Positions 12,050 to 14,565 of a stretch of 64,000 bases of DNA are shown here, one piece after another. Below the pieces are notes generated by a model. The model did no database searches, was not told where the DNA came from, and saw only the letters and a program-made list of their open reading frames with translations. This DNA is from Pelomyxa schiedti (Eukaryota; Protista; Evosea). The position numbers and the translations under genes were made by a program. The DNA is taken from contig JAHLWZ010000694.1 of assembly GCA_020536535.1 (NCBI GenBank), positions 22,406 to 86,405 of the forward strand. Direction: 5' to 3'. Position 1 is the first letter of the stretch; every line of letters starts with the position of its first letter.

Positions 12050-12214
12050 GTCAGTTTTTTTTTTTTTTGAGTTGGGCGGTTTCCAGTTCCAAGCAAATTG
12101 GTGGTTTGGAATTCCACCTTACTTCTACAAATGAGATAGAAGAGACAAGAAAAATGGAGTAAAAACAATATTGTTGTTTATTACAGTAATCAACACAAAG
12201 AAAAGAGGGAGAGT

Positions 12215-14565
12215 TTAGCAGCCCTCGGCGACGTGTACCAGCTCAGATACCGTCGCCTCGTGCGCGGGAGACACAGCGACAATGACTCCTTTGTCTGGTT
12301 CGCGAGCTTCTGCTATCTCTGGCTCGGTGAAAACTTCCATGAATGAGTCCATGAACTTGGGCCCATAGACCCAGTGGATGTCCTTCGCGCCAGTGAAGCC
12401 ATTGAAGCTGTAAGAGCGTCAGAAGTTTAACAAAAAGCAACGCTGGAACAAACCTGCTATGAGCCGCCGTAGTGTAAGCACCCATGTTCTCAAAGTAAAG
12501 GTAGTCTCCAATTCCCAGTTCCGGCAACATGGCCTCCTTGGTAATGCAATCAAGGCTGTCGCAAGTAGGCCCAAAGATCATCGTAGGATAAAGCTTTGTG
12601 TTGTCAATACCAGGCCTCGGGAGGACTTTAGGTTCAGGGTGCTGGTGATCAAAGAAAATGCAGTTGAATGACTGGTAAACCCCATCTGAAATGTAGTAGA
12701 TGAAACGGGCAGGCGCCCCAGTAACGTCACGAACAACTCTGCGGGCAAAGATATTGCACGCAAGGGTATGTGACTTCATAGCAAAATAGCGGCCAGGCTC
12801 TGCCATAAACTCGGTACCAGCAGGGAAACGCTCGAGAACTGGAATCAGTACTTGAGCAATCTGTGAAAGTGTAGGCGTGTCGTGATCAGTCCCTTGGAAG
12901 CCTCCACCAATGTCTAGCACTTTCATTTCGATACCAAGTTCAGCAGCCCACTAATGCGGAATTAGAAAAACGGAACAAAAGGAACTTTCAACAAACCTTG
13001 AACACTTGCAACGCGTCAGAAGCGGATTGAGCAAACGCATTAGGATCCCCACATCCGGATCCAACATGGAAGCTCACCTGATTAAAGAGTGTCAAGAGAC
13101 TGGGCAGGCAAGAGTCAGAAACAAAAATATATTTTGTTTCGGGAAATTGGAGATATTCGGCTATATTTTTTTGACAAAAAAAAAGATAGCAAAAAAATAA
13201 ACCTGTGAAGGGAGAGAGAAGATATTTTTTTATAAGGAGGCTGTAGTTATTTCCAACTGAGAATAATTGATTCAAACGGAGAATATTTTGGGGAGAAATG
13301 TAGGTATTATGATATGAAGGATCAATTGGACTACAGCCATCAAAAAAAATATCGGTAAGGAACAATGAAGTGATTATGTGAGCTTTACACCCATCGATTT
13401 GAAGGATATAAGGTCCACTACATACCAACCAAATAATAACCACCCTCGGTATGAGAGTAAGGATATTATAAGGAGAGGAAAGACGCACCCCTTTGGTCCA
13501 GGCACAGCACAGCCCCAATCTACAAAAAAAAGGCGGGAGAACATTGATATATGGGAGAAAGTAGGCACAACAGCAATAAGCCGAGGGAGTAAACAGAATA
13601 TGTTAGGGGGCTGTACTGTGTCCAGAGCCAAAGGGGCCAGCTAGTACACCAAGTAACCCATCATCACAAATAAAGTGATAATGGATAGGGAATGGATCAT
13701 ACCCCAATCAGATTGAGATCCAACTCAACAGCCAACCTTGTAAGGGGTAAGAAGAACAATAAGCGTGCAACAGAAACTCACTTCAGAAGAGCGGGCACAT
13801 CTTTCATAGAGGCTCCAAACTTCACACTGAAGCGGCACAGTGAGTGGGAATCATCAGTGATGATACGTAAAATCAACTCGGCATCAGGATACAAGCGAGC
13901 AATTTTGCGCATCTCATCGGCGTTGTCAAATGTCATCCTTTTCACCTCGACTTCGCGAGCATGCATGATCTGCGACTCCATTTTGCACGGATTTGCAAAC
14001 ACAATTCTTCGTGTGCTAACACCCATTCCCAGAATAGAATCAATCTCGTTCTTGCTAGCGCAATCAAATCCGGTGCCCAGCCTGGCCAAGGTATGGAGAA
14101 CCCCGGGGTTTGGATTGCACTTCACAGCTGAAGGACAAAGTTAAAATAATAAAAGTAGGACAAGTCGAATACCGTAGTACGGAACTACCATCGGCAAAGT
14201 CGCGCGCCACTGGCGATATTTTTCAACGATCGTCTCCAAGTTGACGACGTAAAAAGGATTGCGGTGTTCGGCGTAAGCGGATTCGACTTTGCGTNNNNNN
14301 NNNNNNNNNNNNNNNNNNNNNNNNNNNNNNNNNNNNNNNNNNNNNNNNNNNNNNNNNNNNNNNNNNNNNNNNNNNNNNNNNNNNNNNNNNNNNNGTAGTA
14401 CGGAACTACCATCGGCAAAGTCGCGCGCCACTGGCGATATTTTTCAACGATCGTCTCCAAGTTGACGACGTAAAAAGGATTGCGGTGTTCGGCGTAAGCG
14501 GATTCGACTTTGCGTGTGATGATTGTCTCGGTGCTATCGTGCGATTCGGCAGAAGAGAGTGACAT
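12215..14565 (-). CDS. ODC1: ornithine decarboxylase (PLP-dependent, fold type III)
   Basis: PFYVVNL, PYY|AVKCNP (PLP lysine), GFDCASKNE, FANPCK, TFDN, KFGA, IG|VSFHVGSG, LDIGGGF, AEPGRYF, FGPTCDSLD, ENMGAYT, SFNGF; TAA at 12215-12217. Confidence 0.97.
13078..13702 (-). promoter_or_regulatory. unusually long structured ODC intron containing three hairpins and a putative 94-nt poison cassette exon (13426-13519)
   Basis: GT donor at 13702 and AG acceptor at 13078 join ...IG|VSFHVG. Inverted repeats at 13488-13516/13607-13636, 13367-13447 and 13239-13338. Cryptic U8GUAG| acceptor and |GUAUGU donor. Confidence 0.6.
14295..14394. other. 100-N scaffold gap with a ~121-nt flank duplicated on both sides (14174-14294 = 14395-14515)
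   Basis: The same ODC exon-1 segment lies on both sides of the Ns. Confidence 0.9.

What the first reader, a model, noticed from the sequence alone, without database searches (positions are those of the whole stretch)
13078..13702. ODC intron hides a structured poison-exon module: candidate polyamine-sensing splicing switch
Seen: this intron is 625 nt, about ten times the local norm. On the ODC sense strand it forms hairpin H1 (CCCCUUUGG-C-UCUGG-A-CACAGUACAGCCCC at 13636-13607 pairs with GGGGCUGUGCUGUG-C-CUGGA-CCAAAGGGG at 13516-13488, ~28 bp), H2 (13447-13367) and H3 (13338-13239). The imperfect pairs are mostly G-U on this strand and would be A-C mismatches on the other, which points to selection at the RNA level. 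The H1 loop begins with a CUAAC branch-like motif and ends in U8GUAG, an acceptor 3 nt before the 3' arm. A consensus GUAUGU donor (13425) sits in the internal loop of H2. Together they define a 94-nt cassette exon (13519-13426) with an in-frame UAA (13468-13466) that would truncate ODC before the HVGS motif. Established: polyamine enzymes are under RNA-level feedback (antizyme frameshift, AZIN1/ODC uCC, SAT1 poison exon/NMD), and fungal TPP riboswitches control splicing from introns. Inference: a structure-gated AS-NMD switch, possibly binding polyamines directly, which I do not know to be described for ODC.
Basis: partly seen in the sequence, partly recalled or inferred. Interest (0 to 1): 0.88.

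Follow-up and report, generated by a model that had tools for sequence, protein, structure and literature searches.

The report
Conserved, mostly retained intron in amoeba ODC
One ornithine decarboxylase gene of the anaerobic amoeba Pelomyxa schiedti carries an oversized, tightly folded intron that most transcripts keep, and related amoebae preserve it under selection, so it probably limits how much of this polyamine-making enzyme is produced.

Summary
Window 13078-13702 (minus strand) is a 625-nt phase-0 GT-AG intron in an intact ornithine decarboxylase gene (ODC1) of Pelomyxa schiedti. RNA-verified neighbouring introns are 42-46 nt.

New here:
- Every RNA contig crossing the intron keeps it, while four flanking mini-introns are spliced. 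Retention puts a stop at the second codon.
- Three related amoebae have a 603-999-nt intron at the same codon. Retained transcripts occur in two of them. In the closest relative (relC), at least nine retained and three precisely spliced contigs coexist.
- Synonymous sites between P. schiedti and relC are saturated, yet two intron islands survive: the cassette with both splice sites, and a CAG|GU site.
- H1 is kept by compensatory change.
- All four introns fold better than shuffles, and more so on the sense strand.

No contig includes the cassette, and nothing here bears on polyamine binding.

Verdict: most likely a conserved detained intron with a cryptic decoy or poison exon. It is a new member of a known kind. 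The scan has not noted it on other DNA.

The parts
12215..14565 (-). ODC1 gene (ornithine decarboxylase). Exons lie at 14173-14565, 13780-14127, 13703-13734, 12997-13077, 12454-12950 and 12215-12407. The first exon contains an assembly gap with duplicated flanks.
   Evidence: Pfam PF02784 and PF00278 match. Exon joints come from RNA contigs. The catalytic motifs AVKCN, HVGSG, GGGF, EPGR, PTCDS and GAYT are intact. The NCBI model is P0354.
13078..13702 (-). Long intron: 625 nt, phase 0, GUAUGA..CAG. It is retained in every RNA contig that crosses it. Retention gives GUA UGA, a stop at the second codon.
   Evidence: The homologous intron is precisely excised in relC contig L018 and retained in L020.
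13656..13686 (-). Hairpin near the 5' splice site, 12 bp.
   Evidence: Sense z is -3.9 and antisense z is -0.9.
13607..13636 (-). H1 5' arm. A CUAAC branch-like motif follows it directly.
13520..13533 (-). Internal polypyrimidine tract plus GUAG acceptor, at the 3' end of the H1 loop.
   Evidence: It marks the start of conserved block 1 shared with relC.
13488..13516 (-). H1 3' arm, which forms the first part of the cryptic exon.
   Evidence: In relC the equivalent arm covers the cryptic AG itself.
13426..13519 (-). Cryptic cassette exon (decoy or poison), 94 nt, with UAA at 13468-13466. It is conserved with the relC cassette L020:1242-1330 (89 nt, frameshift to UGA).
   Evidence: No inclusion junction was seen.
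13419..13425 (-). Internal GUAUGUA donor. Together with the 5 nt upstream (13430-13426, GGUUG) it forms the 12-mer GGUUGGUAUGUA, which is identical in relC.
13425..13478 (-). Hairpin H2a inside the cassette. Its 3' arm ends on the donor G.
   Evidence: A similar hairpin exists in relC at intron positions 483-526.
13378..13418 (-). Hairpin H2b.
13221..13353 (-). Hairpin H3: 22 + 9 bp with a 61-nt loop. All three differences between the RNA and the genome fall in this loop.
13161..13202 (-). A 42-nt mini-intron, GUUUAU..AUAG, spliced out inside the otherwise retained intron in runs X2 and X3 but not X1. It is preceded by pyrimidine tract-CACAG, so 13203|13202 has the AG|GU form of a recursive splice site. 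This is conserved block 2.
   Evidence: Joint. Block 2 matches relC at 5 of 500 shuffles. Coordinates.
13078..13122 (-). The last 45 nt, GUUUCU..CUUGAC..CAG. They have the shape of a normal mini-intron and hold the terminal branch-like motif and acceptor.
   Evidence: Read from the sequence. No use as a separate intron was seen.

Best explanation
This is a conserved detained (retained) intron that limits ODC1 output.

Shown: the intron is a genuine spliceosomal intron, because relC transcripts show exact excision. It is 14-22 times longer than normal introns in this lineage. It has kept its position and large size in four taxa while its sequence was randomised. At steady state it is mostly left in transcripts whose other introns are already spliced. 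The retained RNA cannot make enzyme: the stop comes 2 codons into the intron in P. schiedti and 30-100 codons in for the relatives.

Also shown: two internal elements are under purifying selection between P. schiedti and relC. One is a cryptic exon with its own pyrimidine tract/AG and GUAUGU. The other is a CAG|GU site whose 5' half is used in vivo. A long-range helix, H1, kept by compensatory change, ties a segment about 65-115 nt downstream of the true 5' splice site to the cryptic acceptor and exon start.

Inferred: the cryptic exon acts as a decoy. Its splice sites engage the intron's terminal sites unproductively, or give an unstable poison isoform, and so hold the intron in. H1 sets how available the cryptic acceptor is. 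Full excision releases productive mRNA when the enzyme is needed. Polyamines as the controlling signal is a guess based only on what the gene does.
For: - Retention with flanking introns spliced is seen in 4 of 4 P. schiedti runs, and no contig breaks at the intron borders. The database holds no full-length spliced ODC1 protein from this species' RNA, only the 256-aa downstream ORF.
- A long intron sits at the same codon in three relatives: relA 673 nt (genomic), relB 603 nt (retained in a transcript-like contig) and relC 999 nt.
- For relC, seven metatranscriptome samples gave contigs. Retained contigs are L020 and L101-L108. Spliced products are L018/P0121, P0347 and P0351.
- Paralogue ODC2 has no intron at this site and is expressed and spliced in the same sample.
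- Fourfold-degenerate sites are 29% identical between P. schiedti and relC. Even so, block 1 (118 nt, the cassette and its splice sites) beats 999 of 1000 shuffles, and block 2 beats 495 of 500.
- H1 duplex z is -6.0 in P. schiedti and -4.5 in relC. Cross-species arm pairs fall at the level of the null.
- Whole-intron z, sense/antisense: -7.8/-3.4, -4.0/-2.7, -4.2/-0.7 and -6.2/-2.4.
- Decoy-exon control of retained introns is an established mechanism (PMC6097662, PMC7373989). So is metabolite-linked intron detention in OGT (PMC7261177, PMC12017769).
Against: - All RNA evidence comes from assembled contigs, not reads, so isoform ratios are crude and minor isoforms are invisible.
- The P. schiedti libraries were tailed with poly(A) polymerase to capture bacterial RNA (PMC10579272). 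They therefore sample total RNA, including nuclear precursors. The library type for relB and relC is unknown.
- No spliced ODC1 contig was found in P. schiedti itself, so the gene could be close to silent there.
- The cassette module is not detectable in relA or relB.
- There are no data from different conditions, so regulation is not shown.
- A second, intron-free ODC2 could carry the main enzymatic load.
- I could not test whether other long introns in this genome behave the same way.
Confidence: 0.5

Rival explanations
1. A structure-gated poison exon is spliced in to give an NMD target, and the folded RNA senses polyamines directly, as a riboswitch would.
For: The cassette, its acceptor and its donor are conserved under selection, and the cassette disrupts the frame in both species. 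H1 abuts or covers the cryptic acceptor in both species. Inclusion isoforms could be destroyed by NMD and then dropped by the assemblers.
Against: No inclusion junction appears in the P. schiedti contigs from four runs or in the nine relC contigs aligned to the retained form. The isoforms actually seen are full retention and full excision. No conserved core is found in relA or relB and Rfam gives no hit. Nothing here tests ligand binding.
Confidence: 0.15
2. A passive oversized intron. A spliceosome tuned to about 45-nt introns removes it slowly. The hairpins and internal splice sites exist only to make removal possible, by compaction or stepwise recursive splicing, and retention is a by-product with no regulatory role.
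For: Normal introns here are 41-65 nt. The libraries are total RNA (PMC10579272). An AG|GU site with a used 5' half lies inside the intron. Hairpins take up about 470 of the 625 nt.
Against: This does not explain why selection has kept a costly 600-1000-nt intron at this one site through saturating divergence, while ODC2 and every neighbouring intron stay small. The cryptic exon cannot serve as a stepping stone, because no GU is regenerated at its 5' edge (AUUGGG in P. schiedti, GCGGAG in relC). Retained forms outnumber spliced forms at steady state.
Confidence: 0.25
3. The intron is long because it hosts an independent non-coding RNA, such as a snoRNA, a small-RNA precursor or another RNA, located in the conserved block or the hairpins.
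For: A conserved 118-nt structured island and several stable hairpins are present.
Against: Rfam finds nothing in any of the four introns. The only GUGAUGA lies 550 nt from the only CUGA, with no terminal stem, and there is no H/ACA layout. The edges of the conserved island coincide with splice signals. No block is shared with relA or relB. The intron is seen joined to exons, not as an excised product.
Confidence: 0.07
4. A decayed inverted-repeat transposon (a MITE or introner) that inserted into ODC1.
For: The inverted repeats H1 and H3 resemble nested terminal repeats.
Against: The sequence is single copy in the 52-Mb genome even at E <= 10. The intron predates the split of four taxa. The arms co-vary, and stability is biased to the sense strand.
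Confidence: 0.03

Closest known systems
Decoy-exon-mediated intron retention (human SF3B1 intron 4, OGT intron 4; PMC6097662, PMC7373989, PMC12017769)
   Same: A large intron is retained while its neighbours are spliced. It contains a conserved cryptic exon with splice-site-like ends that is rarely or never seen included. The retained isoform is non-productive.
   Different: The organism is an amoebozoan whose normal introns are about 45 nt, so the intron is long only in relative terms (0.6-1 kb). A long-range helix clamps the cryptic acceptor. Neither decoy activity nor nuclear detention has been tested.
Metabolite-linked detained introns in enzyme genes (OGT/O-GlcNAc, PMC7261177; MAT2A/SAM via METTL16, from my own knowledge)
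   Same: A rate-setting metabolic enzyme whose mRNA is held one splicing step short of maturity.
   Different: Here no signal, sensor protein or condition dependence is known. The link to polyamines is inferred only from the identity of the gene.
SAT1 (spermidine/spermine acetyltransferase) poison exon, polyamine-responsive AS-NMD (PMC7337517 mentions it; the original work is cited from my own knowledge)
   Same: A polyamine-pathway gene with a frame-disrupting cassette exon.
   Different: Inclusion of the SAT1 exon is observed directly and responds to polyamines. Here no inclusion is observed and the main event is retention of the whole intron.
Eukaryotic TPP riboswitches that control splicing (fungal NMT1, plant THIC; from my own knowledge)
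   Same: Folded intronic RNA next to alternative splice sites in a biosynthetic gene.
   Different: Riboswitches have an aptamer core conserved across wide distances and represented in Rfam. Here nothing is conserved beyond the closest species pair and Rfam has no hit.
Alternative splicing of Chlamydomonas ODC1 (PMC2830987)
   Same: An ODC gene of a protist with several non-productive splice variants, some of them predicted NMD targets.
   Different: A different lineage, with no reported conserved oversized structured intron or cryptic exon.

Membership tests
Spliceosomal GT-AG intron | GT..AG borders and exact excision that restores the reading frame | tested here: met
   The borders are GUAUGA..CAG. 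Exact excision of the homologous intron is seen in relC contig L018 and in proteins P0347 and P0351. Excision was not observed in P. schiedti's own RNA contigs.
Retained / detained intron | The intron persists in transcripts whose other introns are spliced | tested here: met
   Seen in 4 of 4 P. schiedti runs, in relB contig L015, and in relC contigs L020 and L101-L108.
Retained / detained intron | Retained transcripts are polyadenylated, held in the nucleus, and released by later splicing on a signal | not testable with these tools
   The libraries were artificially poly(A)-tailed (PMC10579272). No fractionation or time-course data exist.
Poison cassette exon (AS-NMD) | Exon-inclusion junctions are present in RNA | tested here: not met
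   No 13703->13519 or 13426->13077 joint was found. All retained relC contigs are colinear with L020. Contigs can miss rare or unstable isoforms.
Poison cassette exon (AS-NMD) | A premature stop on inclusion, and conservation of the exon and its splice sites | tested here: met
   P. schiedti has a UAA in frame. The relC cassette is 89 nt and shifts the frame to a UGA. Block 1 is conserved despite saturated synonymous sites.
Decoy exon | A cryptic exon with splice-site-like ends inside a retained intron, seldom included | tested here: met
   This is evidence at the sequence and isoform level only.
Decoy exon | Blocking or mutating the decoy splice sites lowers retention | not testable with these tools
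   This needs antisense or minigene experiments.
Riboswitch | An aptamer core conserved in sequence and structure across species, and a match to a known family | tested here: not met
   Rfam has no hit. No block is shared with relA or relB.
Riboswitch | Specific ligand binding | not testable with these tools
   This needs in-line or SHAPE probing with polyamines.
Recursive splice site | A pyrimidine tract-AG immediately followed by a GU that can act as a 5' splice site | tested here: met
   The site is CUCUCUCCCUUCACAG|GUUUAU at 13203|13202. The GU half is used in runs X2 and X3. It is conserved in relC at L020:1651. Use of the AG half was not seen.
snoRNA host intron | C/D boxes with a terminal stem, or hairpin-H-hairpin-ACA | tested here: not met
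   The sequence was inspected and Rfam was searched.
MITE / dispersed repeat | Several related copies in the genome | tested here: not met
   Searches found only the locus itself.

The most novel reading that the evidence does not exclude
The folded intron is itself the sensor. Polyamines, which bind and stabilise RNA helices, would shift the balance between H1 and the neighbouring hairpins. That would change access to the cryptic acceptor and set the ratio of retained to excised intron. The result would be a protein-free polyamine feedback on ODC at the level of splicing.
Probability: 0.06. Interest if true: 0.92.

Novelty: new member of a known kind. Interest (0 to 1): 0.6.

Why it matters
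ODC is among the most tightly controlled enzymes known, through the antizyme frameshift, rapid turnover and translational control. Control by intron detention has not, to my knowledge, been described for it. In my two paper searches on this topic, the only ODC splicing result I followed up was the set of Chlamydomonas splice variants.

Here a lineage whose introns are about 45 nt has kept a 0.6-1 kb structured and mostly retained intron at one codon of one ODC paralogue. It has done so across divergence that erased all neutral sequence, and the intron holds a selected cryptic exon and a co-varying long-range helix.

If this is a regulatory device, decoy-exon or detained-intron control of metabolic enzymes would extend from mammals to Amoebozoa. 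It would also offer a compact natural system for studying how RNA structure gates splice-site choice. The practical limit is that Pelomyxa is grown only in mixed culture and has no genetics.

Tried and rejected
- 5' splice-site sequestration. The minimum-energy folds pair the GUAUG in all four species. With exon context and shuffled controls the pairing probability is not above the null (0.55 vs 0.69, 0.49 vs 0.56, 0.83 vs 0.64, 0.98 vs 0.62). Rejected as a shared feature.
- End-to-end compaction as a test. All four folds bring the intron ends close together, but this is a generic property of large RNAs (my own knowledge), so I did not use it.
- Open reading frame in the intron. 147 codons are open in frame with exon 4. 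The strand is purine-poor, there is no ATG, and gene calls in relB and relC show no counterpart. Rejected.
- Global alignment of the four introns. Apart from P. schiedti vs relC, no pair exceeds shuffles.
- Profile of the cassette block against relA and relB. No hit.
- RNAalifold on the cassette block. There is only one double change in H2a, so the result is uninformative with two sequences.
- Metagenome scan for more ODC1 relatives. It returned only L018 plus generic ODCs at about 55% identity.
- Mastigamoeba ODC locus. Not on record.
- Antizyme search (PF02100) in the genome. No hit, but the controls did not ring either, so this is inconclusive.
- Intron-length statistics in the genome paper's supplement. 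Not given.
- Close relC strains L107 and L108. Too similar to show covariation.

The joined, spliced ODC1 model was never submitted to any search. Exons were searched by reference, and database proteins (P0001, P0121, L016:3-623) were used instead.
Full report
**What is there.** The minus strand of window 12215-14565 encodes an intact ornithine decarboxylase. Pfam PF02784 and PF00278 match, and all the usual catalytic motifs are present. The genome is that of Pelomyxa schiedti. G000 has 52,367,397 bases in 5337 contigs, which matches the published assembly of 52.4 Mb in 5337 scaffolds (PMC8887013). The RNA runs that carry this locus at 100% identity belong to the P. schiedti single-cell transcriptome series SRR23919866-877. 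The public protein model KAH3759312.1 already treats 13078-13702 as an intron.

It is accurate.
- The interruption lies between ..NLIG and VSFHVGSG. It is 625 nt, phase 0, with GUAUGA..CAG borders.
- RNA contigs show that the other introns of the gene are 45, 45, 46 and 46 nt. Introns of the paralogue are 41-65 nt.
- H1 (13636-13607 with 13516-13488) has 28 bp and 3 G-U pairs. Its duplex energy is -56.2 kcal/mol against -30.9 +/- 4.2 for shuffles, with 0 of 1000 shuffles as good.
- The CUAAC motif, the U8GUAG acceptor, the GUAUGU donor at 13425, the 94-nt cassette and the UAA at 13468-13466 are all in place.
- Whole-intron fold z is -7.8 to -9.6 on the sense strand and about -3.4 on the antisense strand.
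- The sequence is single copy in the genome and has no Rfam match.

**What the RNA shows.** I laid the contigs of four RNA runs, all from one sample and one study, on 12100-14290.
- All four flanking mini-introns are spliced.
- Every contig that crosses the long intron keeps it. X1 carries all 625 nt.
- X2 and X3 carry it minus a 42-nt mini-intron (13161-13202) that has been spliced out from inside it.
- No contig breaks at 13077/13078 or 13702/13703. There is no 13703->13077 joint and no cassette joint.
- Retention gives GUA UGA, a stop at the second codon.
- The protein database holds the 256-aa downstream ORF from these contigs but no full-length spliced product from this species' RNA.

Caveats. 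Contigs drop rare isoforms. These libraries were also tailed with poly(A) polymerase to capture bacterial RNA (PMC10579272), so they sample total RNA.

**Relatives.** Exon-by-exon searches found orthologous ODC1 loci in three other taxa. I did not search the joined spliced model.
- relA is genomic (L013, with a second copy L014). Its intron is 673 nt at the identical codon.
- relB (L015) is a transcript-like contig with no small introns but 603 nt retained at that codon.
- relC is the closest relative, at 86% amino-acid identity. L020 retains a 999-nt intron. L018, from the same species at 99.7-100% nucleotide identity, has it removed exactly.
- The cluster members give more relC contigs, from seven metatranscriptome samples in all. 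L101-L103 read from exon 3 into the intron. L104-L108 read from the intron into exon 4. All are colinear with L020. Two 430-aa proteins (P0347, P0351) come from fully spliced contigs.

So the intron is a real spliceosomal intron, and the retained and excised forms coexist. No contig includes the cassette.

**Paralogues.** The genome also has ODC2 on contig C702, 68-81% identical. It has no intron at this codon and is expressed and spliced in the same sample (L019).

**Selection.** Fourfold-degenerate sites in exons 2, 4 and 5 are only 29% identical between P. schiedti and relC, so neutral sequence is fully randomised.
- In line with this, the introns do not align in general. Five of the six pairwise local alignments score no better than shuffles.
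- The exception is P. schiedti vs relC, which share two islands.
- Block 1 (window 13531-13419 vs L020 1224-1337) beats 999 of 1000 shuffles. It runs from the pyrimidine tract and AG, through the cassette, to an identical GGUUGGUAUGUA. The relC cassette is 89 nt and shifts the frame to an immediate UGA.
- Block 2 beats 495 of 500 shuffles. It covers CAG|GU plus a U-run/A-run hairpin. In P. schiedti this is the 5' end of the RNA-verified 42-nt mini-intron, and it has the AG|GU form of a recursive splice site.
- H1 is also preserved. In relC a 26-bp helix (-43.6 kcal/mol, z -4.5, 0 of 1000 shuffles) joins intron positions 89-117 to 439-466, and it includes the cryptic AG. The arms differ in sequence between the species. 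Cross-species arm pairs reach only -24 and -30 kcal/mol, the level of the null. The arms have therefore co-evolved.
- All four introns fold better than shuffles, and more so on the sense strand: -7.8/-3.4, -4.0/-2.7, -4.2/-0.7 and -6.2/-2.4.
- They also share short enriched words. AAUAUC occurs 9 times against 1.4 expected, usually after a C-run. GUGGUU occurs 5 times against 0.6 expected.
- The cassette block itself cannot be found in relA or relB.

**Interpretation.** The combination points to function rather than accident: one codon, an oversized length kept through saturating divergence, sense-biased structure, two selected internal splice-site elements, a co-varying helix, and retained forms dominant at steady state.

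The best fit among known mechanisms is a detained intron held by a cryptic decoy exon, as described for human SF3B1 and OGT (PMC6097662, PMC7373989, PMC12017769, PMC7261177). Its direct polyamine-sensing step has no support, and the lack of a core conserved across all four species argues against it.

A passive reading is also possible: an oversized intron that this spliceosome clears slowly, with hairpins and a ratchet site that merely help. It remains a serious rival because the libraries are total RNA and I could not examine other long introns. It does not explain why such an intron is maintained at all.

The hosted-ncRNA and transposon readings are weak.

**Limits.** Only one read-laying run was available and it returned contigs. 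Covariation rests on two species. No conditions were compared. The link to polyamines is inferred only from the identity of the gene.

Noticed in passing
window 14185-14500: An assembly gap (N run at 14294-14394) is flanked by a duplicated stretch of about 106 nt from ODC1 exon 1. The public protein model inherits this as a repeated WRATLPM (P0354). RNA contigs show a single copy.
   Followed up: partly
G000 contig C981, L005:920-1650: A second ODC1-like copy at about 92% amino-acid identity. It joins exon-2 residue 89 almost directly to exon-5 residue 76 and has a frameshift, so it lacks the long intron and its flanking exons. It is likely a pseudogene or a collapsed fragment.
   Followed up: partly
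G000 contig C702, L003:1340-3130; transcript L019: Paralogue ODC2 has about 11 small introns (41-65 nt), three of them at positions shared with ODC1, and none at the long-intron codon. It is expressed and spliced in run SRR23919877.
   Followed up: partly
window 13161-13202: A 42-nt mini-intron is spliced out of the otherwise unspliced long intron in two of three runs. The retained RNA is therefore still a substrate for the spliceosome.
   Followed up: yes
window 13266, 13303-13304, 13308: The only differences between the RNA contigs and the genome across 2.2 kb are A>T, a 2-nt deletion and a 1-nt insertion. All three lie in the 61-nt loop of hairpin H3. None lies in an exon or a stem.
   Followed up: partly
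all four introns (window 13078-13702; L013:4187-4859; L015:671-1273; L020:802-1800): Short words are enriched in every intron. AAUAUC occurs 9 times against 1.4 expected, mostly as C-run + UAAUAUC. GUGGUU/UGGUUG are also enriched. They may be protein-binding sites or the two sides of H2a-like hairpins.
   Followed up: partly
L018:1408-1453: The relC contig that has the long intron removed keeps the last 46-nt mini-intron instead, which ends the ORF at ..AAHSR.
   Followed up: no
window 12988-13518: A 147-codon open frame inside the intron is in phase with exon 4. The strand is purine-poor, there is no ATG, and relatives have no counterpart, so it is probably due to composition.
   Followed up: yes
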